A model generated the notes under the pieces. That model was not told the DNA's origin, searched no databases, and was given only the letters and a program-made list of their open reading frames with translations. A DNA stretch of 64,000 nt, from assembly GCF_001194135.2 (NCBI RefSeq), contig NC_068997.1, positions 2,203,457-2,267,456 on the forward strand. Reading direction: 5' to 3'. The position numbers and the translations under genes are program-made. Of the stretch, positions 1,465-63,830 are shown one piece after another (positions within the stretch are counted from its first letter, which is position 1; every line of letters begins with the position of its first letter). Origin of the DNA: Octopus bimaculoides. Taxonomy: Eukaryota.

Positions 1465-2286
1465 NNNNNNNNNNNNNNNNNNNNNNNNNNNNNNNNNNNN
1501 NNNNNNNNNNNNNNNNNNNNNNNNNNNNNNNNNNNNNNNNNNNNNNNNNNNNNNNNNNNNNNNNNNNNNNNNNNNNNNNNNNNNNNNNNNNNNNNNNNNN
1601 NNNNNNNNNNNNNNNNNNNNNNNNNNNNNNNNNNNNNNNNNNNNNNNNNNNNNNNNNNNNNNNNNNNNNNNNNNNNNNNNNNNNNNNNNNNNNNNNNNNN
1701 NNNNNNNNNNNNNNNNNNNNNNNNNNNNNNNNNNNNNNNNNNNNNNNNNNNNNNNNNNNNNNNNNNNNNNNNNNNNNNNNNNNNNNNNNNNNNNNNNNNN
1801 NNNNNNNNNNNNNNNNNNNNNNNNNNNNNNNNNNNNNNNNNNNNNNNNNNNNNNNNNNNNNNNNNNNNNNNNNNNNNNNNNNNNNNNNNNNNNNNNNNNN
1901 NNNNNNNNNNNNNNNNNNNNNNNNNNNNNNNNNNNNNNNNNNNNNNNNNNNNNNNNNNNNNNNNNNNNNNNNNNNNNNNNNNNNNNNNNNNNNNNNNNNN
2001 NNNNNNNNNNNNNNNNNNNNNNNNNNNNNNNNNNNNNNNNNNNNNNNNNNNNNNNNNNNNNNNNNNNNNNNNNNNNNNNNNNNNNNNNNNNNNNNNNNNN
2101 NNNNNNNNNNNNNNNNNNNNNNNNNNNNNNNNNNNNNNNNNNNATACTAGCCACCTCTGATGAGCATAGGGTTATATAATCAGATTGTTATATAACACTC
2201 CATTGTACACCTAGCATGAAACCGATTGGTAAGATCAGCTGTGATGGATATATAATACTGTACACTTTGGACAATACATACATATA

Positions 2287-2322
<36 letters not shown>

Positions 2323-3192
2323 AACATGTATATATACACACACACGCACATTTTACATAAGCAGATCAACTTTACCAATGAGTAGCAATTTCAACTGAAT
2401 TTTGTTTCGTGTTTTTTCAATTTGCCTTTTTTTTTTGTCTTTTTAGTGTTTTAAAACTGTAAAATAAACTCAAGATATTTATATAGAAACTAGCCACCGT
2501 CATTGTTATCATTATCATAATAGCATTCATATCCAGTATTTTTTTCTGGGTTGGACAGGTCTATTACACATTGAATCATTCCAAGAATGAGGTGAATCAA
2601 AAGCTGAAAGCTGAATGCCAAAAAAAAAAAAAATTTTTTTTTTAAATATTCACGAGAAATTGAATTTCCTTTTGTTATTGAATTTTGATTTAAACTGTAA
2701 ATTTTAATTGCAAATTTATTCCATTCACCACCTCTCATCATAGTTTGTGAAATAATCTGTCGTAAACATGCACAAAGGTATACGCACACAAGTGTATTAC
2801 TATTAGCTTCATTTTATATACCCATACAAGTGGCTTATATTTATGTGCGTGAGTGTGTAAATATATATATGTATATATATATATATATATACATGTATGT
2901 ATATATATAAAGAGAGAAAAGGATAAATATATTTCTAGCTTTGCCATTGTTCTCTATCCTTTTCTCTCTTTATACATGCACACGCTAATACACGATCTAT
3001 GTTATAATCCCCACTCATGTTTATACAACGAATGGGGCAAAACTAGCCGGTATACAGCACTTGGTATTACTTGTATCTTTAGGGTTTGGTTGAATCCAAT
3101 ACCCTTCTTAACCTTATATATATATATATATATATATATACACCTCCTGTGCTTGTATATTTTAAGATACACACACACACACACACACACAC

Positions 3193-3229
<37 letters not shown>

Positions 3230-4359
3230 TATATATTAATATAATCTTTAAGACACACTCACACACATACATTTACACCTGTATATACTGTAATATGATT
3301 TATGTCAGACAAGTAAAAGGAAATTGATACAAATTAAGTTATTGTTAACCAACTGGAATACTAACAATGACTTTTCTGGAAATGGTATTGAATTCTGTAT
3401 CTGTGTCTAGGGATATATATATATATATATATATATATGTCTACATACATATGACATGCATGGATTATATACACTCATGCAAGCAGGTGTATGTGTGTAT
3501 CATGCAGCTTCTAATTTTGGTCGTTTGTGTTTATGTAGGGACTAGTTTTAACAGCTGGATCCCCTCTATACCATGCAAACTACACATTTTTACAGCTAGA
3601 TGCCTGCCACACTCCACTAACTAGGAGCCACAATTTTTACAGCTAGATCTCCTCCATATTTCCCTAACTTGGTACTACACATTTTAGTACCAAGTAGATG
3701 GCTGCTGTACCCCACTAACTAGAGGCTAGAGTTTTAACAGCTGGATGCCCTCTCTACACTAAATAGGGGCCACAGTTTTAAAAGCTTGATACCCTCTGTA
3801 ACACTCTAATTAAGGGCTACATTTTTAACAGCTGGATACCCACTCTACACAAAGAGCTACTGTTTTAACAGCTGGGTACCCTCTCTACACTAAATAGGAG
3901 CTAGAGTTTTACCAGCTGGATGCCTTTTGATACGAACAAAAAGCTGCAGTTTTAACAGCTAGATGCCCTTGTACCCTCTAACTACTGCTTTAACATTTGG
4001 ATGCCCTCTCTACACTAGATAGGGGTTAGTTTTAACAGCTGGATGTCCTCTGCCTTGTACTAACTCGGGGCAACAGTTGGAAACAAAGCCAAAAGTATAT
4101 ATGAGTGAGATGTAATCCTCTGTGCCAGATAGGAGCACAGAAACAACTGTCCAAGTCACACCAGCATGAAAATCTCCAAGAGGATGAAAATTGATCATGG
4201 CAGACAAAATACGACTAGTTATTTTGCCTGGCCTTCTAATGGTTCTGTCCAAGCCATGCCATTCTTTCAAATATTATTTTATTTGTTTATTTGTAGAATG
4301 TGGGTGATATATATATAATGGATTGGTGTCTTCGTAACATCTATAGTAGTCTTCCATAG
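430..4359 (+). CDS. Candidate 3' end of an unidentified convergent membrane-protein gene (putative exons 430-487, 2487-2591, 4297-4359)
   Basis: AG/GT-bounded segments splice in frame to ...QENWGSKGVDGVAIDASLQ|KLATVIVIIIIIAFISSIFFWVGQVYYTLNHSKNE|NVGDIYIMDWCLRNIYSSLP*, including one hydrophobic segment. The last acceptor is strong; the other sites are weaker. No homolog recognised. Confidence 0.33.
2152..2236 (+). ncRNA. Hammerhead motif, intact core, branched stem II, weak stem I
   Basis: CACCT-CTGATGA-GCATAGG..(GTTATATAA/TTATATAAC hairpin)..CCTAGCAT-GAAA-CCGATTGG-TA|AGATC. Confidence 0.5.
3541..4060. repeat. Minisatellite, ~12 units of ~42-45 bp, core TTTTAACAGCTGGATGCCCT
   Basis: Core recurs at ~3551, 3592, 3639, 3738, 3782, 3828, 3868, 3913, 3955, 3993, 4035. 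Confidence 0.85.
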
Positions 4360-5171
4360 ATAATGGCATTATCTGCTCATGTCATTCACAATACATTATA
4401 TATATAAATGGGTTTCTAGAAAGCTTGTAATGTTGTTGATAATGAGGAAGGGCATCTAGTTGCAGAAACCATTCTTAAAACTTAATGTTAAGAGCAAGAT
4501 GTGATCCCTTGATACATCTAGCAGAGCAATATCGCTTGATTAACAACTGAGCTGCATTGATGATCTATCCAGTCCATGACAGCATGAAAAGGGAGCATAA
4601 AACAACGGTATGTGAGTGTGGCCACATCTACATGCATACATGTCAAGGTAGGTTTAAAGTTTATTTGATTCACCGAGGAAGTTCTCAGAATATGATGCCA
4701 CACAGGGGCCACATCACCATCATCATCATCATCATCATCATGGCAGGTACATCTAGACTGAATGGGTGAGTAGTTATGGATTCACTTCAGTTCTTAAGAA
4801 TAACACGAAGGTGTTTGTGTGTGTGTTGGGTTAGGAGCAGTAATGTTAAATACTGGCTCAATTATTAATGACTGAACACTTTAGTTTTCATTATAGTTTC
4901 AAAATTATATAATTAAGACATAATTAAGAAGGAAAAGCCAAATCAATCAAAAGAACCAATCTGTCATTAGTATTTCAGTGAGTTTGTTGGTTAAAATATA
5001 TTCTACAACAAACACACAAACACACACACACACATTGGAATAACACTGTGTATAGACATAACACTGGGCTGTGTGTGTGTGTATGTATATCTATATGTTT
5101 TCAAATATATGTGTGTGCGTATGTAGGCAATAATATTGATAATAATAATAAGTCATAAGAAGTAAAGGAAT

Positions 5172-5350
5172 TGTTCCTTAGTTTATTCATTTATAAATAC
5201 AGTCTTTAAATTTTCCAAGTAAATGAAATTAAATGAAATAAAATTAAATAAAGTAGAATGATTATGTTATTTTATTTTGCGGTATTTTATTTCATTCCAT
5301 TTCATTTCTTTGGAAAATTTTAAAGATTTTTGTATATAAACTAAGGAACA
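5172..5350. repeat. Imperfect AT-rich foldback/MITE-like palindrome
   Basis: tgttccttagttta...tctttaaattttccaa...aaatgaaat mirrored by atttcattt...ttggaaaattttaaaga...taaactaaggaaca. Confidence 0.65.
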
Positions 5351-6244
5351 TTTTCTTCAATTCTTCCAACTTCTTCATTATTACTATTATTATTATTATT
5401 ATTATTACCAATATATTATTGTCATCTATTAATACTGAAGTTTTAATAAATGTATTACCATCTTATAAAATAGCAGCCAAATCTTCCTTTAAACTGTTTT
5501 AAAATGGAGTAGATGCATTACAAAATGTAGTCCTAGATACACTATCTGAAAATATAATAGGATACTCAAGGCTACAATGTTTGATCCAATGTACGTTCAC
5601 TCTGAGCTGGGATTGTGCTAATTGTTGCATATTTACTTAAGGACACAACACACCACTTAAACCACATGAATCAAACCCATGACCGTATGGTTGTGAGCTC
5701 AACACTCTAAACATTAGTCTATGTGCTTCGTGGTTGAGGTGTTAGCACATGATCATATGTATAACCTTGAACATGTATAATATATACATATATATACAAA
5801 CATATTATGTGTGCATAAATATATATATCTTCAGTATGTGTGTGTATTTGTATCGCCTTTTCACAGCCTGTTACATAATAAATGTGTGTTTATATGTATA
5901 TTATATAGCTGTGTGTGTATACAGGTACATACGAAAGTTATGAATTATTTTGTTATATTCGTATCCAGTTGCACAAGTCAACTGAGTCAGATAAAAATTG
6001 ACTCAACCATCTTCAGTGATTTTTGAAAATAGTAACATGAACAAACACTTGTAAAATATAAATTCACACTATATCCATTGCATCAGGAGCTCTTTGTTAT
6101 ATGAAACTTAGTCAATCAGTTCATATATATATATATATATATATNNNNNNNNNNNNNNNNNNNNNNNNNNNNNNNNNNNNNNNNNNNNNNNNNNNNNNNN
6201 NNNNNNNNNNNNNNNNNNNNNNNNNNNNNNNNNNNNNNNNNNNN

Positions 6245-6276
<32 letters not shown>

Positions 6277-10196: not shown

Positions 10197-11632
10197 TATA
10201 TATACATAATGTGTCCTATCCGTACGGATGGTAAGGTGTGACTTGAGGGATATTTGACCACTGTTTCTGATGGGCTATGACCATGTAAAGGGTTCTTCAC
10301 TGATTATGGTTACTATGATGGTATGGAGTGATTTCATGTTGGATGGCAGCCTACTTAGATGGTTTGATATAATGCCATGATGTAGTTTGGTGGTTTATTG
10401 TAATGTTGGTTATAGTTGGTTATAGTCTAGCTGTGTGTGAAAGACTACATTGTAGAAGTTCTGCTGGAAACAATAGTGAAATAAAAAGTGTTGACATTTC
10501 TGTGTTTGGTGGGGCTAATATTAGGGACAGAGGTTAGGGGAAGAAGACAAGCAAGCAATTAAGACAAAATGTGGAAATAAAACAGCAGCTAATTATTGCT
10601 GTTGAGGTTATGTATGTCAGCTAATGATACATCTAATTTAGAATCAAAGCATTAAGCAAATTAATTAAATAAACTTTTAGTTTCTCCATTCTCTGTATCT
10701 CTCTCTTTTAATCAAATATTTCTGAAACTGCAAACAAAATCTAAAATGTTAAAAACTTCTTTCTGTTTAAAAATTGAAAATTAAAAATAAGTTTATAATA
10801 TAATAATGGTAAGAAATGGTAAAAAATATTGAAAATAGTGAGGCACACGAAATGTCCTTGACATTTTGTTTTGTCTTATTTTTCTTTTTCCTTCTTTCCG
10901 TGGCTTAGAATAAATATGATTGGAAGTATGCCACACAAGCCAGGGTAGTGAACCACACTAATAATGAAGAAGGAATTTTATTTTTGTTTGTTTCCATCTT
11001 CAAAACTTTATGTAGTTTTAGACAGCAAACTGTGAAAAATCCTGATTAATTCTCACAAATCTTAATTAGATTTCATCATTTAACAAAACAGGGTTGGTAG
11101 GAGGGGTAAACCATGACAACTGCAGTTATCTTAGTTTGGGATGAATCTCTTTCAACAAAAGTGTCAAAATGATTTCAGTCCATTTAACTGTATCTGATAC
11201 TTGATACATATAAAATTAATTTACATGTTGAATTTGCAGCATAAGAGTTCAAATCCCAGGCTTTTAAACCTCAATCTTAACAAAGCTGCTGACATACATT
11301 TAAATCCAATCATTTATATATATTTTCTATATTTTTAAACATTTTTACATGTCCATAATTGGCATAGGAAAAAAAAAACATTAAAAAAAAATACTCAAAT
11401 ATGCTTTTGAGAATTTACATAGATGGCGATGTAATGTGCAAGAAAAGTTTTGATGAAATGACACTTGCTGCTTTGTTGCAGAAGGAAAATAAGCCCCTAG
11501 TGGCGAATGGTGAAGATCATTAAAAAGAAAAGGGGTGGGTAATTTCAAGAAATTAAGAATTAATTTCCCAGCAAATTTAATTTTCAAGTTTGGGTAGGCG
11601 GGAAATTTGATCTTTGTTATCAGGTATGATAA

Positions 11633-11673
11633 CTATGGACATGTTTCTGCCTTATTAAACCTCATCAGCAAAA
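11633..11673 (-). ncRNA. Minimal hammerhead motif 2.8 kb downstream of the myosin stop, sense strand
   Basis: Minus strand TTTTG-CTGATGA-GGTTTAATAAGGCA-GAAA-CATG-TC|CATAG; core intact, stems I and II weak (G.U pairs, one mismatch). Confidence 0.5.
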
Positions 11674-13247
11674 CAATCTTCTCAAGACTGATCAGTGGAC
11701 AGAGATATTGTTTAAATGTAGAAAAAAGTGACAAAGAACTTTTGGCCAAAATAATTTGCATAATAGCAAAAGTGAGCCAAGTAAGATAACTCAAGTGGGC
11801 CAAGGGCATGAATTCAGGTAGATGCTGATGTACTGAATGATGTACATAATTTTTTTTTTAATGAATTGAAATTTGTCTCTTAATAAGAGACAAAACAAAA
11901 AAAAAAAAGATCTCCACCTGGTGGCAATTGTTAGCAACTCTCAAAGGAAAGGGGGAGATTATTTCAATATAGGAATTTAGCTTTGAATTGAGGGAGTGCA
12001 AAAAAAAAAGTAGATAAATCTTGTTAATGAACTCTAAGGAAGACAAAGTTCTTTTTTTTCTTTTTGATTTCTCTTTTGTTTTCTGTTAATTAGTCCTTAA
12101 TTAATCAGATTTACATGATGAAAAAAAAAAAACATGAATAGTAAAATTATTGAGACAGATTTGTCTTCAAAGATTCCTTTTGAGAGATTCTTTGTCTGTG
12201 AGTAAAAATTGGTATCTGATCAGACAAATGGGTTTTCAGTTACTACATAATTATTTTGATGAGGAACCAGTGGAGTCAACTTTTTTGGTTCATTTTTATC
12301 TCAATCTTCACAACGGCAAGGAATTTAGTTCATAAATCTCAAAACCTGCAGAATGACCGGAAACAAATATAGCACAACATACATGCATATATGTACAAAT
12401 GTGTGTATACACATATATATATGCATATAAACAAATGTATGTAGATACTCTGATGGACTTTCTAATATAAAATGGATGCAAGTGATTTTGTTGACTTATT
12501 CACAAAGAATTGTGTTAATAGCACGGTAGTTCCTCTTTCTGTAAGCAATTCCATATTGGTAGAAGAGATTTCTCTCAGAACAGCCCCTATGAAAATAAAC
12601 CATATGGTTACCATGTCGTTAGTGTTTATCATCATCTTCATTATCATCAGTAGCTGATGTTTTAATTTTGTTGTTTAGTTATCCACTGAGGAAGCAGCAG
12701 ACAAGACAAGGCCTTATTAGATTAGTCTGGTCTGGTTGCTATCATTCCAAGCATTGCCAAAACGGATTAGTCCAAAATGTTTAAGGGTGACCAAGTTGTA
12801 TTGGAAATGGATGAAAACTTCAGGAAACATTACTTAACAAAAACTTGAGAAGGTGGGCATATCGATATTAATTATGTGAAATTGGTAACAAAATGAAATT
12901 AGAAATGAGAGAAAAAAAAAATCTCATAATACAGGCCAAGACACTTTGGAGTGTCCCAGCCCGAAGGTAGGAAGATGAGAAGTTCAAATCGTTGTTAGGA
13001 AAAATTGTCAAAGCTTTCAATTCTCACTTCGGATGTTGCATAAACCTGAATTAATGCAGGTTAAATAAATGATTGACATTTACATTATAGGATATGAAAA
13101 TATTTATATTCTATATGCATTTGTGTGTGTGAGCTTTTGTATACAAAATGCTTTTTGTATATAAAATATACATATATTTTGTATAGAAAATGCTTTTGTT
13201 TTGTATACATACACACATATTAAATTTATAATGTATTTGTGAATATA

Positions 13248-14546: not shown

Positions 14547-17500
14547 CTGGAATGGAAAAAAAAATTATTACTTAAAAAATACAAATATGATTTTTTTTTT
14601 TTTGTTTTTTGGAGTGATTTTTTCATATCAATTAATACTCTAACTTTCTCATTACTCTTAATTTGTACAAATAATTAGATGAAAACAGAAAATGTAAGAT
14701 ATTCATTCAGTCATTCATGCAGATATACATACATACATCACACTCTTTACCACTTCATACTAAAAATATCCACCTAGATTACTTTATTTTTTCTGTCTCC
14801 GATGAAGGGAAGTACTGGATCTTCCCAGAAACAGCTGTAAGACTCTATCCATAAAATACTTCTCCAACCTTACCATTGCTCTCTTTTTGATAAGTGTTCT
14901 GGCATGAAACTCATCTTCAGTCTCTGAACTAGCTTTTCATGTATAAATATTATTGTTTATTCATACATTTACATCCATTTTTCAATGCTAGCATGGCTTA
15001 TACAGGATTTTACTGTGAGATGCTCTTCCTGTCACCAAACCTTACCTGTTTTTCAGATAAAAGTTTGTTATATCCCATATCACTTTTGAAAGTACAGATC
15101 AACTGTCTGTAATGTCAACATCTAACCAGATTCAAGGAGGAAGAAGATAAGGAAGTAAAAAAAGGAAGGATAAGAGTGTGTGAACCTTACTGGTTTGAGA
15201 TGTGAACATCAGGAGGTTTGCCCGAAATATTCTGTATCAAAATATAGGCCTTGGTGATAATTTCAAAGATATGTTCACCACAGAAGATGAAATCACCTTT
15301 TTTGCTCAGAATTCCACCATTTTCCTGCAAAAAGTAATTAGCATTTAATCAATTCATTTACATAAGTGGTACCAACAGAATTAATCCAGTAATTTCTGAA
15401 AAGTATAAAAAGTTAGGAATTTACAGAGAAACAAAAATAAACATGATTTGTTTGTGAAAATATATATATATTCTGAAGAAATTGTATCTTGAAAAAGAAG
15501 AATAGTTCACGTAGAGGGTACAGGCTTATGAGAGAACATCTTTGAAAAATATATTCTATACACACATACTGGGGATCAAATGTCACTTAGCAATCAATAG
15601 AAAACTGTATGGAGAGTGGTCTTTCTGCCATTGTGTGTGTGTGTTTTATACAAACAAGTCAAAAATAAAAACAGGAAAAACAAAAGTCAGAAGGATGTAC
15701 ACATTGAACATATTAAATTGATACTTTAAAATAAGATGGGTTATGACATTTTGAGCATGGAACCCACATCAGTGTATTGGTTGAGAGGACAACCCCCCAC
15801 CCCCTCTAGTTGCCAGCTAGAGATTAAAGAAGAGAAGAACATAGTTGTCTGGTACTATCTGTTTTCCATGCTGGCATGGGTTGGATGGCATGACAGGAAC
15901 TGGTAAGTCCAGGGGCTGCACTAGGTTCCACAGTCTGTTTTGGTTTAGTTTTTATGGTCAGATGCTCTTCCCAATGCCAACCACTTTACAGTGTGAGCTG
16001 GGTGCTTTTAACATGGTACCATCACTAGTGCTGCATATGTGGCACCAGCACCATTGCTTTTTACGTGGCACCATCACCAGCACTTCTTATGTGACACCAA
16101 CAATAGTGCTTTTTATGACACCAGCACCCACAGTAATGCTCTTTTCCCTTTTAGTATGTGGCCCACCCGATAATAACCTGTATCTCACATGTGGTATGCT
16201 TCTTGTAAAAGGTTACCCATACCTGATTTAAACCAACAAATTGATCAAAGAATAAGGGTAAACTTTCTCAAAACAAATATAGCGCTTCTAATGAGAAATA
16301 TATATTCTACAAAAGTAATTCTTGTTCTTCCAAATTTGGCACCGACAAATAGTGGCAGAGAAGAGGAATGTTTATTTGTGGGTTATATCTGTGTAATACA
16401 GATGCTAATTCTATGAGCTGGAAATGTAAGAGGCAACATCAGGATTTGAAACACAGTATGTAGGACATATCTGAATGCTATTCAGGTATTTTTCATTGCT
16501 GCTCTATCTCTGCCACCGTATTGGTTTGTTTTCTAACAATAATAACAAATAGCCCTTATAAAGGCACAAGGCCATAATTGAATAGCAAAAGGAACAGGAG
16601 ATTGTGTGATTCCCATGCCTTGAAACATGATATTCGCTGATATGAGAGAATTTATTGTAACCTACAGCTGAACCTGGTTTGTGCCTGTAGGTTGCCAGAA
16701 CCTCACCTCTTGTTCAATGATACTAATATTATAAACGGTATTACAACATTGGCAATCACATAAGGTCATCACATGTATGGATGGGTTAACACAGAATGAT
16801 TAATATATATAGGTTTGACACATGTAAGAACAACACATATTGGGTTAACAGATGGGACAATAGAAAGTTATTTCTGAATGTTGGCAGGGTTAACAACAGA
16901 CTCACTGAAAGAAAGGGATACCACACTACAAAAGTAGGTAACAGACACAGGTTGTACTAGTAGTAGTAGTAACAACAACAACAATAATAATAATAATAAT
17001 ACCTGATAAACATCGGTAGGCTATAATAATAGTAAAATAGCAAAAGTAAAAATGTTGAAATTCACAGAAAAAATGGAATGGTTAAAAATTTGAAAATGTT
17101 ATCTGTTCTCAGAATGGCTGTTTTGAATAAGAAATATTCTGTAAGAATTAAACGGATTTGTACTGACATAATGGTTTCCAGTTCTTATTAAATTCTATAA
17201 GTTTACCCCATTTTGTTTCAGTCTCTTTTTTTTTTTTTTCTTACTCACCTTTGTTGTCACTATCTTTTCCATGTCATATCGTACCATCTTCTCACTCACC
17301 CCACTNNNNNNNNNNNNNNNNNNNNNNNNNNNNNNNNNNNNNNNNNNNNNNNNNNNNNNNNNNNNNNNNNNNNNNNNNNNNNNNNNNNNNNNNNNNNNNN
17401 NNNNNNNNNNNNNNNNNNNNNNNNNNNNNNNNNNNNNNNNNNNNNNNNNNNNNNNNNNNNNNNNNNNNNNNNNNNNNNNNNNNNNNNNNNNNNNNNNNNN

Positions 17501-35820: not shown

Positions 35821-36552
35821 TACAAATAAAAGGGTAAAGGAATATTAATTTATTAATAAATTAATAATTAATAATTTTTACCAAGTATTTCGGTATGTAA
35901 ACACCATTATCGGTGAAGAACTAATTTAAAAGTTCTTATAAATTTATAAACATAATTAAGGCATCAGCAACAGTTACTTCACCACACACCAAAGTTCAGA
36001 TATAGCAGCTAAAACTCCAACAGATAGCAGTATTTGTAACTCCCAAAGGCAAAACAAGAAGAAAAATCAACGAAACTAATCAGTCTTAGTTAATCATAGA
36101 CGCGTTTCTGGATCAGAATGGTAAAAAACCTTCATTTCCGTCATCAGTATGATATTCTAGTTTGCAGGTCTGAAGGTACAGGCAATTATGCATGCTCGAC
36201 CAAGCATCAAGTACTGCTATCTGTTGGAGTCTTAGCACTTTAGCTGCTATTTCTGAACTTTGGTATGTGGTGAAGCAACTGTTGCTGATCTCTTAATTAT
36301 GTTTATATATATACATACACGTAAAATACACCATTTTGAGCATGGCCGTTGCCAGGACCGCATGACTGGCCCTCATGCCGGTGGCATGTAAAAGCACCCA
36401 CTACACTCTCTGAGTGGTTGGCGTTAGGAAGGGCATCCAGCTGTAGAAACTCTGCCAACTCAGATTGGAGCCTGATGTAGCCATCTGGTTCACCAGTCCT
36501 CAGTCCAACCCATGCTAGCATGGAAAGCGGACGTTAAACGATGATGATGATG

Positions 36553-36583
<31 letters not shown>

Positions 36584-39500
36584 GATAGACAGATAGTAAC
36601 TTCTATGCTGAAGTAGAGACAACATGTTCTTTGTCTATCTCTTTAACTTCTTGGAGATTTTAGGTAAAATTATACTAATGTGTCCATCTGTTCTAATATA
36701 ATTAAATTCTATGTCTTTGTGCAGCTGAGGATTGCTCTGCATTTTAAAATGATGTAATGATTGCATTGTTCAATTAAATGGAGCTGCATGAAACGATCGT
36801 ACTGCATTACCTCTGGATATCCTTGTTGTTTATTTTGACATATAGATAGGTAGATACACACACATATACATGAGTTAAGGAATGGAGTAGATAAAATCCA
36901 GGCTACATATGTTTCCTAATGAGTTGAATCTTGGAAGTGGTAAATGTCCAAGCAAGGTGTATACAGCAGGCTACACTTCAGGCCAAGCGTTTCTTGATTA
37001 AATTCTGATCGAATCTTCTGTGTGTTAACATGCACCTCCTTACAACAATGTAAACTTCATTTAATCCAGATACTCTTGGCCTGAAGAGTAGCCTGCAGTA
37101 TACACCTTGCTTGGATATTTACCACTTTCGAGGTTCTGCTTGCTATGGAACATATGTAGCCTGGATTTCATCAACTTCATTCCTTAACTCATGTATATGT
37201 ATTTGAATACTTGGCAACCCTGTCTGCCAACTGTGAGATATAAAATAATATTTTCAGCTTAACATGTTGTTGGCATTCCGTCGCTTATGATGTCAAGGGT
37301 TCCAGTTGATCCGATCAACAGAACAGCCTGCTCGAGAAATTAACGTGCAAGTGGCTGAGCACTCCACAGACACGTGTACTCTTAAACGTAGTTCTCGGGG
37401 ATATTCAGCGTGGCACAGTGTGACAAGGCTGACCCTTTGAATTACAAGTACACCAGAAACAGGAAGTAAGATTGAGAGAAAGTTGTGGTGAAAGAGTACA
37501 GCAGGGTTCGCTACCATCCCCTGCTGGGGCCTCGTGGAGCTTTAGGTGTTTTTGCTCGATAAACACTCACAACGCCCGGTCTGAGAATCGAAACCGCGAT
37601 CCTATGACCGCGAGTCTGCTGCCCTAACCACTGGGCCATTGCACCTCCACTCAGCTTATCATACTTTGAAATGAAAAATGCCACAACCTTCCACCCCAAT
37701 AAACCACTATTGTTCCTGAAAGTTGTTTTTTATATTTTCAATGGTTTGCTTGAAGCTGATCTTCTTCCTACATCTCGATCCTTGGACCTTACATGTGTGT
37801 GCATGTGTGTATCTATCTCTCTCTCTCTCTCTCTTTCTCTNNNNNNNNNNNNNNNNNNNNNNNNNNNNNNNNNNNNNNNNNNNNNNNNNNNNNNNNNNNN
37901 NNNNNNNNNNNNNNNNNNNNNNNNNNNNNNNNNNNNNNNNNNNNNNNNNNNNNNNNNNNNNNNNNNNNNNNNNNNNNNNNNNNNNNNNNNNNNNNNNNNN
38001 NNNNNNNNNNNNNNNNNNNNNNNNNNNNNNNNNNNNNNNNNNNNNNNNNNNNNNNNNNNNNNNNNNNNNNNNNNNNNNNNNNNNNNNNNNNNNNNNNNNN
38101 NNNNNTATATATATTTACCTATTTCATTTAGGCATTGTTAAACTAATACCTTGGCATAGAACTCAATATACATATGCTTCAGAATGAAACATTACTTGAG
38201 TACAGAGCAGTTATAAGAAAAAAAGATGATAAAAGAATAAATGATAAGATAATCATTTATTCCTTTGTCATCTTATTTTCTTATGTACGCATATCTGTAT
38301 ACAGATGTAATTAAACATACTTACTTTGAATTGCGAGCCGGCAGTGGCTGGACGTTTTAAAGATGGGCGAGCGGGATTTCCTATCAATGATAAAGACAAA
38401 TAGAATAGAATACGTATATGTGAGTGTATAAGTATATGAATATTTCATCACTATCATCTTTTTCTTCTTTTTCCAGCCGAGCGTAACCATGTATCTCCTC
38501 AGCAGTAAGACAGTTGTTCCATCTCCCCCGCCGTACTAGTACCTCTCCACACCTGGCATAAACCATTTCCTTCGACACCATACTCTTCTCAGTCAAGGGG
38601 TCTTCTTTACTTGTGAGTTGCTTTGCAGCTTCACTAGAGCTGGTGACATGCAAAATCACCCACTGCACTCTGTAAAGTGGTTGGTGTTAGGAAGAGCACC
38701 CAGCTATAGAAACCATGCCAAAAGCAGCCAATAGATCTTGATACAGTCTTCTCACCTGCTGGATTCTGTCAAACCATTTGATCCATGCCAGCATTGAATA
38801 CAAACGAATGGTGATGATTTAAATATAACATCTACGAAATTAAGTTAAAATAGTATTAAAACTGTTACATATTATAACAAGGTTATTTGTAGAGATGAGG
38901 TGTAGTTTGTTGAATTATTCCCAGTATATAACTGTTATTCAATGTATCACAAGAGATGAAAGGCAAAGTTGACCTCACTGACATTTGAAAACAGAATATA
39001 AAGAGCCTGAAGAAATTCTTCAAAGTACTTTTTCTGATATTCAAATGATTCTGCCAGTTTGCCAGCCTAAATAATGGTTTCTATAATAAAGGCTTGGAAT
39101 ATTTTTGGTAGAGGAGAGGATTAGTCAATGAAATCCACCTAGTTCATGACTGGTATTATTTTTTATTAGTGCCTAAAGCAGTGGTTCTCAACCTGTCGTC
39201 TGTGGACCCCTAGTGGTCCGCAAAAGTATTACTGGGGGGGGGGGGTCTGTGAACTATATTCAGAATTTCACACACCCACACATACATAAGGACAAGTATA
39301 TTAAAAGGGGTCCGTGGGAAAACTCGTTTAAATAAACGGTGGCCTTGGTAGTGAAAAGGTTGGGAACCACTGGCCTAAAGGATAAATGGCAAACTCAACC
39401 TTAGAACTCAAACTGTTAAGGTCTGTAAGTAAAGAACAGTTCTTTACTTTTCTTGTAACATCACAGATTTCAGTTGCATAACAACAACAATTGCAAAATG

Positions 39501-50603: not shown

Positions 50604-53600
50604 TACACACACTAAATGACAAGTCATACGCATATATATATATATTTATGTATGTATATATGTGTGTGTGCATATATATATATACACACACACAAACACA
50701 TTAAACAATGATGATTATATATATGTATATGTGTGTGTGTGTGTGTTCAACTGTTAATCCCTACATAGTTTTGCTCTCTCTCTATTTTTCCATTCTCTCT
50801 CTACTTTTTTCCTCTCATCCCTTTCTGCCAAAGAGCATAAGCTCGAAATGTCAAAGACTTTTCCATTCTTCCTGAGTGTCAAACTAATAAGTCTGCTTGT
50901 TATTCCCTCTCTTGTCTTTGTCTTTTGTTTTCTGTAAATTTGAATTTTATAAATATAAATATATATATACATAAATATATATAATCACCATCAGTGTTTT
51001 AATGTCCACCTGTCTATGCTCACCTGCCTCAGAAGGAATTTGTTATATACCCCTTTTATCTTTTACTTGTTTTAGACATTGCACTAACCTGGTACTTATT
51101 CTATTGGTCTCTTATGTTGAACCATTAACTTATGGAAATGTAAACAAACTAACACCAGTTGTCAAGTGGTGGTGGGGAAAAAAACAGAAACACAAAGACA
51201 TATGCAGACTTATATGACAGGCTTCTTTCAGTTTCCATCTACCAAATCCACTCACCAGGCTTTGGCCAGCTCATGACTATGGTAGGAGACACTTGCCCAA
51301 GGTGCCATCAGTGTGTGTGTGTATAATTGAGCCTTTGTAGGGTAGATTTAATTTAGACACAGTCTGCATTAGAATTCCCTCTCTGGGTCATGTGATACTT
51401 GTTTTTATGCTAATTGTTAAGTGTTGACTGCTGTCCTTTTTTTTAATTGTTTCAATCATTTGACTATGGCCATGCTGGGGCAATACCTAGAAGGATTTTT
51501 CATCAAACAAATCAACCCCAGTGCTCACATATTTTTTTTTAAGCCTGGTACTTATTCTATCAATCTCTTTTCACTGGTTATCAAGTAGCAGTGGAGGAAA
51601 ACGCAGACACAAACACACACACTCACGCACACACACACACACACGATGGGTTTCTAGTGGGACTGAACCTGGACCTACATGGTTGGGAAGCAACCATGCT
51701 GACACACTTGCACCTATGTGAGGAATGTTAAATGGATGACAGCAGTGAGTAGTGGTGGTGGTGGATGAGTGGTACAAAGTAGCTCTCTTGATGTCTCAGA
51801 AGGTATGGCAAAGTAGGTTAACTACAGGGCTATGTCTTCATAGTATACAAGTAAAAACTTACAGCAGGCATTTCATTGACTTTTTGGACACCAGTTCATT
51901 TATGTGAAACATCATTTTGGAATCTTATCCACAACAGAAACTATTTATCAAATGAACATTTGTCTTACGTCTGTTCCAGATCTGTCCCACATCTGCATTA
52001 TATTTCTCTCATATCTACACCAGATCTGTCACACATACATACCAGACCAGTCACATATGTACCAGATGTATCACATCTGTGTTTGATCTGTTTTGTATCT
52101 GTACCATATCTGTCTCACATCTGTACCAGATCTGTTTCACATCTATTCCAGATCTGTCTAACATCTGCGACAAATGTGTCTCACATCTGCACTAGATCTG
52201 TCTCACATCTGCACTAGATCTGTCTCACATCTGAACCAGATCTGTCTAATATCTGTACAAGACTGCCACCTATACTAGGCTCTTGAATTTTATTCTCATC
52301 ATTACTCATGCTGTCCATCACCAATTTCTTCAAAATTTATCTTTCATTCCCACATGGAGACAGTCTCACCATTTTGGAATTATTTCCAAAATGGTGAGAT
52401 GGAAAATAACAGCATTGAAATTCTCAAAGACAACTTACCCTGATACCATCGTTGATTCTCTGCACCAACCATGAAAACATTCGACTATAAATGGCTTTTG
52501 ATAAAGCATCTCTCGCATAGGCAGACTGTAAGGAAAAAGACAAGGTAACAAGGGTTACTGCTGGATATGGGGGTGGTGGATGACTGCGAGGATGGGGGTG
52601 ATGGCAATGGTTGCAATGGCAGTGATGGTGATTATAGTGATGATTATGGTGGTGATGGTGAGTGTGGTAGGAGTCAGTTGAATATAGTAGTAGTGATGAT
52701 GATGATGAGTGTGGTCATGGTAGTAGTGGGAGGTGTAATTGGTGGTGCTGTTCATAAACAGTGGTGGTGATGGTGTCACTGTAGTAGTGGCATATGTAGT
52801 AGTAACGGTGCTAGTTGTGGTAGTAGTAGTAGTGGTAGTAACGGTTGTATGAGGTTGTAATTATAGTGATGGACAGAGTAGCAATAGTGGTCTAAGAAAT
52901 GATGATAGCAGTGGTGGTGGCGGAGTAAGTGAAGGGGTGGTAGGGATAGTGTAGATGGTAGTGGTAATGTTGTAGTTGAAGGATCAGCAGTAGTAGTAGT
53001 GTAAGTGCTAGTGGTATCATAAATAATAGTAGTAGTTGTAGTATAGGAGGTTGTGGTAGTTGTAGTTGACGTACATGTGGTTGTAATATATAAGAAATAC
53101 TTACATCAGCTGTGCTTAAGTCAGTTTTTAACTTCTCCCCACGGGCCTCGACAGTGCGTTGGGTTAAGGCAGTCTTCAGCTCTTCATAGGAACAACCTAA
53201 CAGCTCGGCAACCTCCTGGGCCTCTGCAAGTGACACACAACTCATTAGAACATTACAGAACAGGAGTAGGTAGGGGCTACCACCCTGAGGCTATACTGTT
53301 GCATCTCAGATATGGAGGTACACAAATGATAAGACAATGACAAAACTGGGGGTGTGGCAAGGTAATGTTGTGGAACTTTATAAGTGATTTAGGGGGGGAA
53401 AACAAATGGAGAAGATTTTCCATAGGGGTATATATAAGATTGCATCAATTCTATGGCCTTTACATAGGGGTATATAATAGCTGGTTAGAGGTTACATTGA
53501 GGTGTGAAAGCATGTGACCAAGTGGTTGGGGTATTTGGCTAATGGTCTTAAGGTTGTGAGTTCAATACCGGATAGTGCTTTGTGACCTTGGGACTTTATT

Positions 53601-54718
53601 TCATGTTGCTCCAGTCCACTCAGCTGGTAAAAATAAGTTGTACCTGTGTTTCAAAAGGCCAGCTTTGTGAAACAGTGCCAAAGCTAACAGAGGAACTTGG
53701 TGCAGCCCTGCTGCTCAATGGATCCTGTCAAACTGTCCAACCCATGCCAGCATAGAAAATAGACATTAAATGAAAATGATATACATGCCATTCATTGATC
53801 ATCATCATCATCATTTTATGTGAGTTTATGGATGCTCACAGGGGTCAGTCCTGTGTTATCCTAAATAGAACAACAGAGCAAACCCAACCAGCTTTGTTTT
53901 TCTGTTTATCCTACAGTGTGGACTGAGTGTGGTTTATTGCACCACCAACAGAACATTAAACATGTTGTCCCAAGCAGAAAATAAAAGCAGCCTTAAGATG
54001 TTGTAAGTGTGAGTGCTGATTATGAGTGTGAGTGATGATTATGAGCATGAGGTGTTGGTGTAATAATCTGAATGAAGGGCAGCACTTACCATACTCGTTC
54101 ACTAAGACACAACCATTGGTGCCATCTACATTACTTCGATGGTGAAACTCTAAATTTCCCAACTTTAAAACACTGGAAACTAATTGAAACACTGCAAAGA
54201 TTTCTTGGATTTGGAAACCAATTACTTCCATTCCATTCTGAAATGTTTAGAAATAAGATTTAGATAAATTATATGAGTGGGGTGTAATTACAGGTAGAAA
54301 GAAGGAATGCCTCTGTCTATGGATAATAGACATACAGACTACAGGTGTGGTGCTATTAAGCCTTTAACTGCAAAATAAAACTTCATGGTTAAGAAACTGG
54401 AATTTTGTGATATTATTTTAAGCTGGTTACCATACATTTCCCTGAGGAGAAGTTTACATTTTTAACATCACTGATTCCTATGGATTGCATAAATTGTAAT
54501 TCTTCGAAACATATGTCGGAATAAAAGTATGAAGTTATAATATGCGTTTACTCCATTCTTTAAATTTATATATACTCAAATACCCAAAATATCAAGGAGT
54601 TTCTACCTCATAAACAGGAGTTACACCACAGTTATTTTGTGATTTTTGCTACCCTGGTATCTATTAACCAATTTATTTTATCCGAGTTATTTATTACTAG
54701 GAGAAAATAAATACATAT

Positions 54719-62077: not shown

Positions 62078-62328
62078 AGGCACCTGGGTCCTGTGCAGGC
62101 GGCACGTAAAAAACACCATTTTGAGCGTGGGTGTTGCCAGTACCGCCTGACTGGCACGTAAAAGCACTTACTACACTCTCAGAGTGGTTGGCGTTAGGAA
62201 GGGCATCCAGCTGTAGAAACTCTGCCAGATCAGATTGGAGCCTGGTGCAGCCATCCGGTTTCACCAGTCCTCAGTCAAATCGTCCAACCCATGTTAGCAT
62301 GGAAAGCGGACGTTAAACGATGATGATA
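62078..62328 (+). mobile_element. SINE family A with (GAT)n tail
   Basis: ...GGCGTTAGGAAGGGCATCCAGCTGTAGAAAC...GCATGGAAAGCGGACGTTAAACGATGATGAT; copies ~15845(-), ~17690(+), ~36324(+), ~48950(+), ~55860(-), ~57918(-), ~63130(-). Confidence 0.85.
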
Positions 62329-62418
62329 TATATATAGATATATATATATATATACATATATGTATATGTATATATATGTGTGTGTGTGTGTGTGTATATA
62401 TATGTATATATCTACGCA

Positions 62419-62611
62419 CACGAGGGGTTGCTGAAAGATTCCTGGCTTTGGGTAAAAGGAAATACAGGAGGATCAGTTAATTATGATTTTATCCTACATA
62501 TTCCCCTTGCAGATTCACAATTATTGCAGCAGTCCTTCAGTTTTTGTTCAGTTCTGCAAAAGAACTTGGAAGGTTGGGCCTCCAAACAGGCTTTTCACAG
62601 CACCCCTTGTG
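62419..62611. mobile_element. Mariner-type MITE, second copy of the 31820 family
   Basis: CGAGGGGTTGCTGAAAGATTCCTGGC...; shares AAATACAGGAGGATCAGTTAATTATG core. Confidence 0.65.
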
Positions 62612-63129
62612 TTTGTGTATATATATATGTTTCACTTGTATCAGTCATTAGACTGGGGCACTGCCTTCAATTTTTAGTCGCATGAATCGCCCTCAGTACT
62701 TACTTTTTAAGTTTGGTACTCGTTCTATCGTTCTCTTTTCCTGAACCCGTAAGTTATGGCGACGTAAACACACCAACAACAGTTGTCAAGTGGCAATGGA
62801 GGGACAAATACTGTCACAAACACATCAATATATATATATATATATATATACACAATGAGCTTCTTTCAGTTTCCATCTACCAAATCCATTCACAAGGCTT
62901 TGGTCAGGCCCAAGGCCATAATAGAAGACATTTTCCCAAAGTGCCACACAGTGGAAATGAACCCAGAACCACGTGGTTGGGAAGAAAGCTTCTTACCACA
63001 CAACCACTCCTGCACCTTATGCATATTTTTATTAATATTTAATGAAAGTATACATATAATCATATGTATATATACAGTTCTAATTTTCCTGTTTGCACCA
63101 ACATACCTGTGTATGCATATATATATATA

Positions 63130-63310
63130 TCATCATCATCGTTTAACGTCCGCTTTCCATGCTAGCATGGGTTGGACGATTTGACTGAGGACTGGTGAAA
63201 CCGGATGGCAACACCAGGCTCCAATCTGATCTGGCAGAGTTTCTACAGCTGGATGCCCTTCCTAACGCCAACCACTCAGCGAGTGTAGTGGGTGCTTTTA
63301 CGTGTCACCA
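63130..63310 (-). mobile_element. SINE family A, 5'-truncated
   Basis: Reverse complement of the 3' part of 62078-62328. Confidence 0.85.
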
Positions 63311-63390
63311 AGAAAAAAGCAAAAGAGAGAGAATGCTTTTTTCTTGGTGACTTCTTCTTTGTGACATAATGCTTGGGAAAGAATATATTT

Positions 63391-63489
63391 GCGGCTGAAG
63401 ATAGCTTTATACCATCCTGTCCATCAATTATATACCCATATAATGATGCAACGACTGTTTGGGTATAAAGCTTGAAAGACATCTACCGC
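63391..63489 (+). ncRNA. Type I hammerhead ribozyme, intact core, long stem II
   Basis: GCGG-CTGAAGA-T-AGCTTTATACC..GGTATAAAGCT-T-GAAA-GACATC-TA|CCGC; 11-bp perfect stem II; predicted CUA cleavage 63485/63486. Confidence 0.75.
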
Positions 63490-63536
63490 GGAATCCTTTG
63501 TGTTCTGTTTTAATTTTACGTTTTGAATTTATGTAT

Positions 63537-63567
<31 letters not shown>

Positions 63568-63796
63568 TACACTCTCTGAGTAACAGTTTGTGAAAATTTT
63601 TTGGGCGTTGATAAAAAGCATATTAATCTACCTTCGATATTCAAGTACTATTTTTGTGTGTGTGTATGTGCGTGTGTCTACATGTGTTTGTATGTGTATA
63701 TGTGTATATATGTGTGTGTGTATGTGTGTATATATATACATACACACATGTGCTGCTGCTGGTTTCTCTTCCATCTTTGGAGTTTTCCCTTTCCCC

Positions 63797-63830
63797 TTTC
63801 CAATGAAGAGCTGTGCTCGAAATGTCAGAC
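63797..63830 (+). ncRNA. Degenerate minimal hammerhead (same family as 50821)
   Basis: CCAATGA-A-GAGC-TGT-GCTC-GAAATGTC; followed by CTGAGTGTCAAGCTAATAA. Confidence 0.42.

What the first reader, a model, noticed from the sequence alone, without database searches (positions are those of the whole stretch)
2152..63830. Swarm of at least 11 Penelope-type hammerhead ribozyme motifs across one gene locus
Reading for CUGANGA...GAAA...NUH with flanking stems found type-I hammerheads at 2152(+), 11633(-), 14795(+), 36093(-), 36720(+), 36901(-), 37078(+), 50821(+), 54438(+), 63391(+) and 63797(+), about one per 6 kb. Cores look intact at 2152, 11633, 36093, 36720, 54438 and 63391. All have the very short, usually palindromic stem III known from Penelope-like retroelements, which are reported to cleave as dimers. 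No Penelope RT or GIY-YIG ORF is visible, so these are orphan ribozyme-bearing termini. If this density is genome-wide, the genome carries a very large, probably unannotated self-cleaving RNA layer (inference).
Basis: partly seen in the sequence, partly recalled or inferred. Interest (0 to 1): 0.85.

Follow-up and report, generated by a model that had tools for sequence, protein, structure and literature searches.

The report
Orphan Penelope-type hammerhead ribozyme relics
The introns and flanks of an invertebrate class-I myosin gene hold about ten short retrotransposon fragments, each carrying a minimal hammerhead ribozyme motif of the kind found in Penelope-like elements; the motifs are real, but this is a known kind of genomic litter and about half the copies are already mutated.

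Summary
A descriptor search (CUGANGA, helix II, GAAA, palindromic helix III, UH, helix I) finds 6 to 8 hits. Dinucleotide shuffles give 0.15 to 1.4 hits. With exact cores there are 4 hits against 0.01 expected. Five sites have intact cores and supporting helices: 11668(-), 36147(-), 36725(+), 54442(+), 63395(+). Five are decayed: 14799 (U4C), 36981 (A9U), 37081 (A13G), and the paralogue pair 50825/63800. Site 2152 cannot be told from chance.

Two motif-bearing elements are head-to-head inverted duplications, the insertion structure described for Penelope-like elements (PLEs). None lies in a tandem array. No reverse transcriptase or GIY-YIG endonuclease was found in the 300 longest open frames. 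No motif touches an assembly gap.

The best reading is strongly 5'-truncated or solo PLE termini from several families, probably inert as single copies. Rfam models miss them. Thousands of such solo minimal hammerheads per animal genome were reported in 2014, so this is a new member of a known kind.

One unusual trait is a long helix II of 32 to 72 nt in six copies, usually with a mismatched pair at its base. PLE membership is inferred, not shown.

The parts
11628..11678 (-). Minimal type-I HHR with intact core. Sequence: CUGAUGA (11668-11662), G, helix II GUUU/AGGC with loop AAUA, A, GAAA (11647-11644), palindrome ACAUGU, C17 at 11638. Helix I has 2 bp, a U.U mismatch, then 3 more pairs (5 of the first 6 positions pair).
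   Evidence: (0.010 expected by chance). Rfam Hammerhead_HH9 scores only 10.1 bits here.
14795..14843 (+). HHR relic with one core mutation, CCGAUGA (U4 to C, at 14799-14805). It continues A, helix II GGGAAG/CUUCCC (6 bp, 8-nt loop), A, GAAA (14828-14831), palindrome ACAGCUGU, A17 at 14839. Helix I is GUCU/AGAC, 4 bp.
   Evidence: (0.035 expected). The minimum-energy homodimer forms the 8-bp intermolecular helix III and both helix II hairpins. The helix II segment has z = -2.2.
35939..36313 (-). Head-to-head inverted insertion structure. Arms 35939-36036 and 36208-36313 are about 91% complementary. They flank a 171-nt unique centre that holds HHR 36147. I read it as a main copy (36207 to 35939, minus strand) plus an inverted copy of its last 100 nt or so.
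   Evidence: The layout matches 'inverted 5'-truncated copy adjacent at the 5' end' in PMC8557442.
36093..36153 (-). HHR with intact core. Sequence: CUGAUGA (36147-36141), C, 30-nt imperfect helix II (GGA..UCC closing), A, GAAA (36108-36105), palindrome ACGCGU, C17 at 36099. Helix I is 6 bp (AUCAUA/UAUGAU). It is sense to the myosin gene and intronic.
   Evidence: 0.003 expected; the minimum-energy fold contains helix I; helix II closes end to end.
36719..36807 (+). HHR with intact core. Sequence: CUGAGGA (36725-36731), U, 56-nt imperfect helix II (UGC..GCA closing), U, GAAA (36790-36793), palindrome ACGAUCGU, A17 at 36801. Helix I is 6 bp (GUGCAG/CUGCAU). The carrier fragment, about 36598-36839, is flanked by ATAGATAG-like repeats.
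   Evidence: 0.001 expected; the palindrome pairs intermolecularly in the minimum-energy dimer; sequence.
36854..37208 (.). Inverted repeat with 150-nt arms (85% complementary, 55-nt spacer). It is two 5'-truncated copies head to head with their 3' ends outward, each carrying one HHR relic.
36901..36984 (-). HHR relic in the left arm. Core is CUGAAGU (A9 to U, 36981-36975), followed by a 59-nt helix II region (decayed), GAAA (36915-36912), palindrome ACAUAUGU, and A17 at 36904. Helix I is GGC/GCC.
   Evidence: (0.168 on its own; supported by its paralogue).
37078..37161 (+). HHR relic in the right arm. Core CUGAAGA is intact (37081-37087). Helix II is long and well paired (UAGC/GCUA, GCAG/CUGC, ACCUUG/CGAGGU). 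GAAA is mutated to GGAA (A13 to G, 37147-37150). Palindrome ACAUAUGU, A17 at 37158, helix I GGC/GCC.
   Evidence: (helix II z = -2.5, closes end to end).
50821..50856 (+). Decayed classical min-HHR. Helix I CUUU/AAAG; core CUGCCAA (A6 to C, G8 to A); A; helix II GAGC/GCUC with loop AUAA; GAAA (50845-50848); UGU; C17 at 50852.
   Evidence: It is a paralogue of 63796-63830.
54438..54521 (+). HHR with intact core. Sequence: CUGAGGA (54442-54448), helix II GAAG/CUUC (G10.1-C11.1) extended by UUACA/UGUAA, 57 nt in all, GAAA (54506-54509), palindrome ACAUAUGU, C17 at 54517. Helix I is UUCC/GGAA. It is intronic and antisense to myosin.
   Evidence: (0.015 expected).
63388..63492 (+). HHR with intact core. 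Sequence: CUGAAGA (63395-63401), U, perfect 11-bp helix II AGCUUUAUACC/GGUAUAAAGCU enclosing a second hairpin (72 nt in all), U, GAAA (63474-63477), near-palindrome AGACAUCU, A17 at 63485. Helix I is 7 bp.
   Evidence: the minimum-energy fold is hammerhead-compatible; z = -5.7; below 0.001 expected.
63796..63830 (+). Decayed min-HHR, second copy of the 50821 family. Core CCAAUGA (U4 to C, G5 to A); A; GAGC/GCUC with loop UGU; GAAA (63819-63822); UGU; C17 at 63826.
2152..2240 (+). Not supported. It has CUGAUGA (2157-2163) and GAAA (2218-2221), but helix I has only 2 contiguous pairs, helix II does not abut the core, and helix III is a non-palindromic hairpin. The upstream context is lost in the gap at 1465-2143.

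Best explanation
The sites are the ribozyme-bearing terminal parts of Penelope-like retroelements (PLEs).

**What the copies are (inferred).** They are strongly 5'-truncated or solo pseudo-LTR fragments of roughly 150-400 bp. They come from at least five or six different families and ages. They inserted into introns and flanks of a class-I myosin gene on the minus strand.

**Motif anatomy (shown).** Each fragment carries one minimal type-I hammerhead. Its parts in order are helix I (3-7 bp), CUGANGA, helix II, GAAA, a helix III reduced to a 4-8-nt palindrome, and the cleavage site UH.

**How it works in a source element (from the literature).** Transcripts run through tandem pLTR-ORF-pLTR units. 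Two hammerheads pair through their palindromes into one extended helix III. This dimer is the active form and cuts after H17. The cut leaves 2',3'-cyclic phosphate and 5'-OH ends and trims the element's RNA.

**State at this locus (inferred).** The copies are single. No two intact copies share both a strand and a palindrome. Five of the ten carry a mutation in an invariant core position. They are therefore most likely inert, neutrally decaying relics. Motif, statistics, inverted architecture and absence of ORFs are shown. PLE origin, dimer cleavage and inertness are inferred.
For: 1. The motifs are far above chance. There are 4 exact-core hits against 0.01 expected, 6 against 0.15, and 8 against 1.39 in dinucleotide shuffles. 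Per-site expectations run from below 0.001 to 0.17. By my own arithmetic on the real half-site counts (25 GAAA-plus-palindrome sites and 44 CUGANGA sites), about 0.03 full motifs are expected and 4 are seen.

2. Several features match those listed for PLE min-HHRs in PMC4209133. Positions 15.2-16.2 and loop 3 are palindromic in 9 of 10 copies. There is an unpaired nucleotide after A9 in 9 of 10. G10.1-C11.1 is present in 6 of 10. Helix I is short. The copies are mostly solo and heterogeneous in sequence. That paper also reports pairs on opposite strands 100-700 bp apart; here 36147(-) and 36725(+) are about 600 bp apart.

3. Helix II segments fold closed end to end in 5 of 8 copies, with z down to -5.7. 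Minimum-energy folds keep helix I in four copies. The minimum-energy homodimers of 14799 and 36725 pair the palindromes between molecules.

4. Only three complex inverted repeats of 50 nt or more occur in the window, and two of them carry HHRs. Both are head-to-head, with 3' ends outward. This is the PLE insertion signature in PMC8557442.

5. Paralogue pairs carry different inactivating changes: A9U against A13G, and two different double changes in the other pair. That is the pattern of neutral decay after insertion.

6. There is no RT or GIY-YIG, and no tandem array.
Against: - No PLE protein remnant is present, so assignment to PLEs rests on motif type and insertion anatomy only.
- Six copies have a helix II of 32-72 nt, against the 6-8 bp with a short loop described for PLE min-HHRs.
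- Most copies also have an extra unpaired nucleotide before G12, which amounts to a mismatched 10.1/11.1 pair. This is not listed among PLE-HHR traits.
- Rfam hammerhead models do not reach significance.
- Proximity to microsatellites, a known PLE insertion bias, is not significant here (P = 0.16).
- No related copies from the same genome could be obtained, so element boundaries and family consensus sequences are unknown.
- Thermodynamic folds of 36725, 54442 and 11668 prefer alternative pairings.
Confidence: 0.72

Rival explanations
1. The fragments are not truncated autonomous PLEs. They are short non-autonomous elements mobilised in trans by PLE enzymes, either solo monomers of non-LTR retrozymes or SINE-like HHR carriers such as the Schistosoma Sm-alpha elements.
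For: - All copies are short, and no coding remnant adjoins any of them.
- The 50821/63797 family is a small repeat that starts next to microsatellites in both copies.
- The literature derives animal retrozymes from PLE pLTRs (bioRxiv 10.64898/2026.07.22.740005; PMC7761336).
Against: - No tandem array contains an HHR.
- The motifs lack a stable helix III.
- No loop 1-loop 2 contacts of canonical retrozyme HHRs are evident.
- The head-to-head inverted copies are the signature of PLE target-primed insertion with 5' truncation (PMC8557442).
- With only one or two copies per family in the window, a fixed 5' end cannot be assessed.
Confidence: 0.2
2. The motifs are chance matches to a loose pattern in AT-rich, microsatellite-rich DNA.
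For: - Loose descriptors do hit shuffled sequence: 3.6 per window with helix I of 3 bp or more and any helix III, and 1.4 with the relaxed palindrome rule.
- 2152 and the extra hit at 58811 are at that level.
- Rfam finds nothing significant.
Against: - Strict-descriptor counts exceed all 200-1000 shuffles.
- Traits that the descriptor did not select for are present: an 11-bp and a 6-bp perfect helix II, 6-7-bp helix I, and long inserts that close end to end.
- Two sites are duplicated as paralogues.
Confidence: 0.02
3. The motifs are host-exapted intronic ribozymes that act on the myosin pre-mRNA, like the conserved intronic hammerheads of amniotes.
For: Two sense-strand copies lie inside an intron: 36147(-) with an intact core and 36981(-). 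A third sense-strand copy, 11668(-), has an intact core and lies 3' of the mapped exons.
Against: - Seven of the ten copies are antisense to the gene.
- Paralogues show inactivating core mutations, so there is no purifying selection.
- Helix III is too short for monomer activity (PMC4209133).
- No conservation data are available.
Confidence: 0.03

Closest known systems
Minimal type-I hammerheads of Penelope-like elements (Cervera & de la Pena 2014, PMC4209133; Lunse et al. 2017, cited from PMC6765202)
   Same: - Type-I topology with the CUGANGA / GAAA / UH core.
- Helix III reduced to a palindrome of 4-8 nt, which implies action as a dimer.
- An unpaired nucleotide after A9 and a short helix I.
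- Extreme sequence heterogeneity between copies.
- Mostly solo dispersed copies, including opposite-strand pairs a few hundred bp apart.
   Different: - Six copies have a helix II of 32-72 nt instead of 6-8 bp with a small loop.
- Most copies also have an unpaired nucleotide before G12.
- No pLTR-ORF-pLTR unit is present in the window.
Non-LTR retrozymes of animals (PMC7229834, PMC7761336, bioRxiv 10.64898/2026.07.22.740005)
   Same: - Type-I hammerheads with a weak palindromic helix III.
- Non-coding carriers.
- A proposed derivation from PLE pLTRs.
- Axolotl HHR_Amex2 has a U.U mismatch at the base of helix II, as 36725 and 63395 do.
   Different: - Retrozymes are tandem arrays of 150-400-bp units whose HHRs keep loop 1-loop 2 contacts.
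- Here there are no tandem arrays, and the copies are solitary or inverted.
Naiad PLE 'HHR_half_core' cases (Craig et al. 2021, PMC8557442, Methods)
   Same: The two core halves, CUGANGA and GAAA, are separated by an unusually long spacer: 35-50 nt there and 32-72 nt here.
   Different: - The Naiad cases were reported as not fitting any stem/loop descriptor.
- The copies here do have helix I, a closed helix II and a palindromic helix III.
- Nothing links these copies to Naiads.
Rfam hammerhead families (Hammerhead_1 RF00163, HH9 RF02275 and others, clan CL00010)
   Same: The catalytic core is the same.
   Different: No match at gathering score. The best match is 10.1 bits, against a 52-bit cut-off for HH9. 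These models were built on canonical hammerheads with a helix III and loop contacts.

Membership tests
Hammerhead ribozyme, type I | Conserved core: C3 U4 G5 A6 N7 G8 A9, G12 A13 A14, A15.1-U16.1, and H17 not G | tested here: met
   Met exactly at 11668, 36147, 36725, 54442 and 63395, and at 2157, which fails on its helices. One invariant position is changed at 14799, 36981 and 37081, and two at 50825 and 63800.
Hammerhead ribozyme, type I | Three helices around the core, with helix I open-ended | tested here: met
   Helix I has 3-7 bp, except at 11668 (2 bp, a mismatch, then 3 bp). Helix II closes next to the core, allowing one unpaired nucleotide on each side. Helix III exists only as a palindrome.
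Hammerhead ribozyme, type I | Match to the curated Rfam covariance models at gathering score | tested here: not met
   There were 0 matches at gathering score. No hammerhead appeared in the top 150 hits at E of 10 or less. HH9 scored 10.1 bits at 11619-11681(-), and nothing matched at 14799.
Hammerhead ribozyme, type I | Self-cleavage 3' of H17 | not testable with these tools
   This needs in vitro transcription of monomer and dimer constructs, or sequencing of RNA ends.
PLE minimal hammerhead (Cervera & de la Pena 2014) | Helix III absent or reduced to a short palindrome (positions 15.2-16.2 plus loop 3) | tested here: met
   The palindromes are ACAUGU, ACAGCUGU, ACGCGU, ACGAUCGU and ACAUAUGU (three copies). 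AGACAUCU has one mismatch. AUGU, with a G.U pair, occurs twice.
PLE minimal hammerhead (Cervera & de la Pena 2014) | Unpaired nucleotide between A9 and 10.1, and a G10.1-C11.1 pair | tested here: inconclusive
   The extra nucleotide is present in 9 of 10 copies. G-C closes helix II in 11668, 14799, 36147, 54442, 50825 and 63800. It is U-A or A-U in 36725, 63395, 36981 and 37081. Seven copies also have an extra nucleotide before G12, which that paper does not describe.
PLE minimal hammerhead (Cervera & de la Pena 2014) | Compact helix II (about 6-8 bp with a small loop) | tested here: not met
   Met only at 11668, 14799, 50825 and 63800. The other six copies have 32-72 nt between A9 and G12.
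Penelope-like element insertion | ORF with a PLE-type reverse transcriptase and a GIY-YIG endonuclease between pLTRs | tested here: not met
   A Pfam scan of the 300 longest stop-free segments (53 aa or longer, all frames) found only Myosin_head, Myosin_TH1, IQ, DUF4817 and weak noise. The copies are therefore orphans at best.
Penelope-like element insertion | 5' truncation with an adjacent inverted 5'-truncated copy (inverted pLTR structures) | tested here: met
   The structures are at 35939-36313 and 36854-37208. They are 2 of the 3 complex inverted repeats in the window (PMC8557442).
Penelope-like element insertion | Insertion bias for microsatellites | tested here: inconclusive
   The median distance to a microsatellite is 257 nt, against 449 nt for random positions (P = 0.16).
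Non-LTR retrozyme | Head-to-tail tandem repeats of about 150-400 bp, each with a type-I HHR | tested here: not met
   TRF finds no array that overlaps any motif.

The most novel reading that the evidence does not exclude
The six copies with a helix II of 32-72 nt may represent an unrecognised structural subclass of retroelement hammerheads. These are 36147, 36725, 36981/37081, 54442 and 63395. Most of them also have a mismatched pair at the base of helix II. Standard descriptors, which use short helix II loops or a 7-17-nt core spacing, and the Rfam models both miss this form. If it is the working form in some PLE lineages, two things could follow. Lineages reported to lack canonical hammerheads, such as the Naiad 'HHR_half_core' cases with 35-50-nt spacing, may in fact carry them. 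Hammerhead counts in invertebrate genomes may also be underestimates.
Probability: 0.15. Interest if true: 0.55.

Novelty: new member of a known kind. Interest (0 to 1): 0.3.

Why it matters
- The result confirms that a reader working from raw sequence can pick out real minimal hammerheads that Rfam-based annotation misses entirely.
- It shows how densely such relics can populate one invertebrate gene: about 10 in 61 kb of read sequence.
- Biologically this is the expected debris of Penelope-like retroelements. It does not change what is known about ribozymes or about the myosin gene.
- The one open point is the long-helix-II architecture. If it recurs genome-wide and sits in the pLTRs of coding PLEs, search descriptors for retroelement hammerheads should be widened.

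Tried and rejected
- **Rfam scans.** I ran cmscan on the whole window at gathering score and at E of 10 or less, and on two 110-120-nt sub-windows. There was no significant hammerhead match and only microsatellite-driven miRNA noise. I took this as insensitivity of the models to min-HHRs, not as evidence against the motifs.
- **U3-A8 covariant core (UUGANAA).** No hits.
- **Retrozyme arrays.** TRF finds none at the motifs.
- **Microsatellite targeting.** Not significant.
- **Homology between the long-helix-II copies 36725 and 54442.** No convincing alignment.
- **Host identification through the myosin exons.** The best hits were only 50-65% identical, including one named Lottia fragment. The host is an unidentified invertebrate.
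- **Sampling more of the host genome through its abundant SINE.** The metagenome scan gave one 3.7-kb contig (L001). It is a LINE (APE + RT ORF) that shares only the SINE's 3' tail. The genome-contig scan gave nothing. No comparative data were obtained for the hammerheads.
- **Extra candidates.** 58811(+) is at chance level. 35489(-) and 44726(+) have GAAA-palindrome half-sites without a convincing 5' half.
- **Papers not held.** Lunse et al. 2017 and Arkhipova et al. 2017 could not be read. I therefore could not check whether long-helix-II variants are described there.

Full report
**Setting.** The window is eukaryotic. It is about 35% GC and rich in (TA)n and (CA)n microsatellites and SINEs. 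It has 11 assembly gaps totalling 2850 N. Its coding content is a class-I unconventional myosin gene on the minus strand. Exons map from about 23.9 kb to about 56.4 kb, with seven Myosin_head segments, a TH1 segment and IQ motifs. The nearest database proteins are only 50-65% identical, so the host is an unidentified invertebrate.

**Assembly gaps.** None of the eleven motifs contains an N. Only the first, at 2152, lies near a gap, 9 nt downstream of the gap at 1465-2143. All the others are at least 680 nt from any gap. The gaps affect only the density estimate.

I therefore wrote descriptors following the published definition of Penelope-type minimal hammerheads (PMC4209133). I compared the window with dinucleotide-preserving shuffles in which the gaps were kept in place.
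- A generic descriptor (CUGANGA, up to 120 nt, GAAA, A15.1..U16.1, H17, helix I of 3 bp or more) gives 13 hits against 3.6 ± 2.4. Three of them have a perfectly palindromic helix III and a helix I of 4 bp or more, against 0.012 expected (0 of 500 shuffles).
- Anchoring on GAAA plus a palindrome, and requiring helix I and a helix II that closes next to the core, gives 4 exact-core hits against 0.01. With one core mismatch allowed it gives 6 hits against 0.15.
- Allowing one mismatch in the palindrome gives 8 hits against 1.39. The eighth, 58811, is AT-rich and at chance level.
- Per-site expectations from 1000 shuffles range from below 0.001 (63395) to 0.168 (36981).
- The half-sites are themselves enriched: 44 CUGANGA sites against 26.6 ± 4.9, and 25 GAAA-palindrome-H sites against 14 ± 3.9. 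Conditioning on those real counts, my own arithmetic still expects about 0.03 complete motifs where 4 are seen.

**Site by site.**
- Intact core with supporting helices:
  - 11668(-): short helix II, palindrome ACAUGU.
  - 36147(-): helix I of 6 bp, palindrome ACGCGU.
  - 36725(+): helix I of 6 bp, palindrome ACGAUCGU.
  - 54442(+): G10.1-C11.1 pair, palindrome ACAUAUGU.
  - 63395(+): helix I of 7 bp, perfect 11-bp helix II, near-palindrome AGACAUCU.
- One invariant position changed:
  - 14799(+): U4 to C. It is otherwise a textbook min-HHR with a 6-bp helix II and palindrome ACAGCUGU.
  - 36981(-): A9 to U.
  - 37081(+): A13 to G.
- Paralogues:
  - 36981 and 37081 are the two arms of one inverted repeat. 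Their different lesions imply an intact ancestor.
  - 50825 and 63800 are two copies of another repeat, 79% identical. Each has two core changes. At every core position at least one copy keeps the consensus, which is compatible with an ancestral CUGAUGA-A-GAGC-loop-GCUC-GAAAUGUC of the classical min-HHR form.
- Not supported: 2152 has intact boxes, but helix I has only 2 contiguous pairs, helix II does not abut the core, and helix III is not palindromic. It cannot be told from chance.

**Structure.** The segment between A9 and G12 folds on its own into a hairpin closed end to end in 5 of 8 copies. The z-scores are -5.7 (63395), -2.5 (37081), -2.2 (14799), -1.6 and -1.5. Minimum-energy folds keep helix I in 36147, 63395, 36981 and 37081. 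The minimum-energy homodimers of 14799 and 36725 pair their palindromes between the two molecules, and the 14799 dimer reproduces the whole dimeric hammerhead. Other copies prefer alternative pairings, so thermodynamics alone is not decisive.

Two traits depart from the published PLE consensus.
- Six copies have a long helix II of 32-72 nt.
- Seven copies have an unpaired nucleotide on both sides of helix II, which amounts to a mismatched 10.1/11.1 pair.

A U.U mismatch at the base of helix II is known in axolotl HHR_Amex2 (PMC7229834).

**Context.**
- No tandem array overlaps any motif.
- The window has only three complex inverted repeats of 50 nt or more, and two of them carry hammerheads. 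In 36854-37208, two copies of about 175 nt lie head to head with their 3' ends outward, each with an HHR relic. In 35939-36313, a main copy with its HHR adjoins an inverted copy of its last 100 nt or so. Craig et al. describe this structure for PLE insertions as an inverted 5'-truncated copy next to the 5' end (PMC8557442).
- 36147(-) and 36725(+) are about 600 bp apart on opposite strands. Cervera and de la Pena also noted this arrangement (PMC4209133).
- The 300 longest open frames contain no reverse transcriptase or GIY-YIG domain.
- Proximity to microsatellites is suggestive but not significant (P = 0.16).
- Three motifs are sense and seven antisense to the myosin gene. Those at 36.1-37.2 kb, 50.8 kb and 54.4 kb are intronic.

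**Interpretation.** The best explanation is orphan, strongly 5'-truncated termini of Penelope-like elements from several families. Each carries the element's minimal type-I hammerhead.

In source elements two such motifs in one transcript are thought to dimerise through the palindrome and to cleave after H17 (PMC4209133, PMC6765202). Even then activity in vitro is low, and the ribozyme is dispensable for insertion in vitro (PMC11167929).

Here the copies are single. No two intact copies share a strand and a palindrome. Paralogues have accumulated different inactivating mutations. I therefore infer that they are inert and decaying neutrally.

The main rival cannot be excluded, because each family has only one or two copies in the window. 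It holds that these are short non-autonomous carriers mobilised by PLEs, as solo retrozyme monomers or SINE-like elements. Chance is excluded for seven sites individually. Exaptation by the myosin gene is unlikely.

**Novelty.** Thousands of dispersed solo min-HHRs per metazoan genome, 'probably related to truncated PLEs', were described in 2014 (PMC4209133). Counts reach 126,000 type-I hammerheads in axolotl (PMC7229834). The finding is therefore a new member of a known kind.

The long-helix-II architecture is the one feature that may be undescribed. Craig et al. mention Naiad elements whose two core halves lie 35-50 nt apart and fit no descriptor (PMC8557442). That is a lead, not a link. I could not read Lunse et al. 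2017 or Arkhipova et al. 2017. I also could not obtain further copies from the host genome.

Noticed in passing
window 36330-36545, 17786-17968, 48434-48484, 48992-49173, 55856-56035, 57846-58093, 62152-62354, 63117-63309; L001 163-3435(-): An abundant SINE family has at least 8 copies in the window. Its conserved 3' tail (CATGCTAGCATGGAAAGCGGACGT) matches the 3' end of a 1090-aa endonuclease-plus-reverse-transcriptase LINE ORF on a metagenome contig. The SINE therefore probably borrows that LINE's tail. It is unrelated to the hammerheads.
   Followed up: partly
window 23967-56400, minus strand: A class-I unconventional myosin gene occupies most of the window, with Myosin_head, IQ and TH1 exon segments. 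The closest database proteins are only 50-65% identical, so the host species was not identified.
   Followed up: partly
window 7961-8275(+), 9623-9907(+), 30345-30776(-): Remnants that look like a mariner-type DNA transposase by eye (no Pfam match supports this), plus a DUF4817 helix-turn-helix ORF of 144 aa.
   Followed up: no
window 35359-35619, minus strand (GAAA at 35489): A possible twelfth, degenerate hammerhead-like site: CUGGAUGA (one inserted G), then UUGGUU/AACCAA, then GAAAGAUAUAUCUC with a 10-nt palindrome. Helices I and II do not abut the core, so it is not significant.
   Followed up: partly
window 63304-63351: A perfect 18-bp hairpin (GTCACCAAGAAAAAAGCA / TGCTTTTTTCTTGGTGAC) lies at the junction between a SINE copy and the fragment carrying hammerhead 63395. 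It may be a small inverted junction.
   Followed up: no
window 594-949, 32873-33327, 3713-4051, 51961-52262: Tandem repeats with periods of 197 bp and 236 bp (about 1.8-1.9 copies each, possibly one SINE-like family), a 44-bp minisatellite, and a 22-bp array of about 14 copies. None carries a hammerhead.
   Followed up: no
window 28731-29018(-) and 45048-45356(+): Two copies of another interspersed repeat share a translated stretch ([23 protein letters not shown]...). The second copy is followed by a (GATGAC)n-like array at 45503-45632.
   Followed up: no
window 57829-57979: This is the third complex inverted repeat of the window. It is two SINE fragments head to head and has no hammerhead.
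   Followed up: no
window 298-330, 1465-2143, 37841-38105, 55564-55855, 57183-57600: Five assembly gaps beyond the six listed with the finding. The gap at 37841-38105 lies about 630 nt downstream of the hammerhead cluster at 36.1-37.2 kb. Complex PLE insertions are known to break short-read assemblies (PMC8557442).
   Followed up: partly
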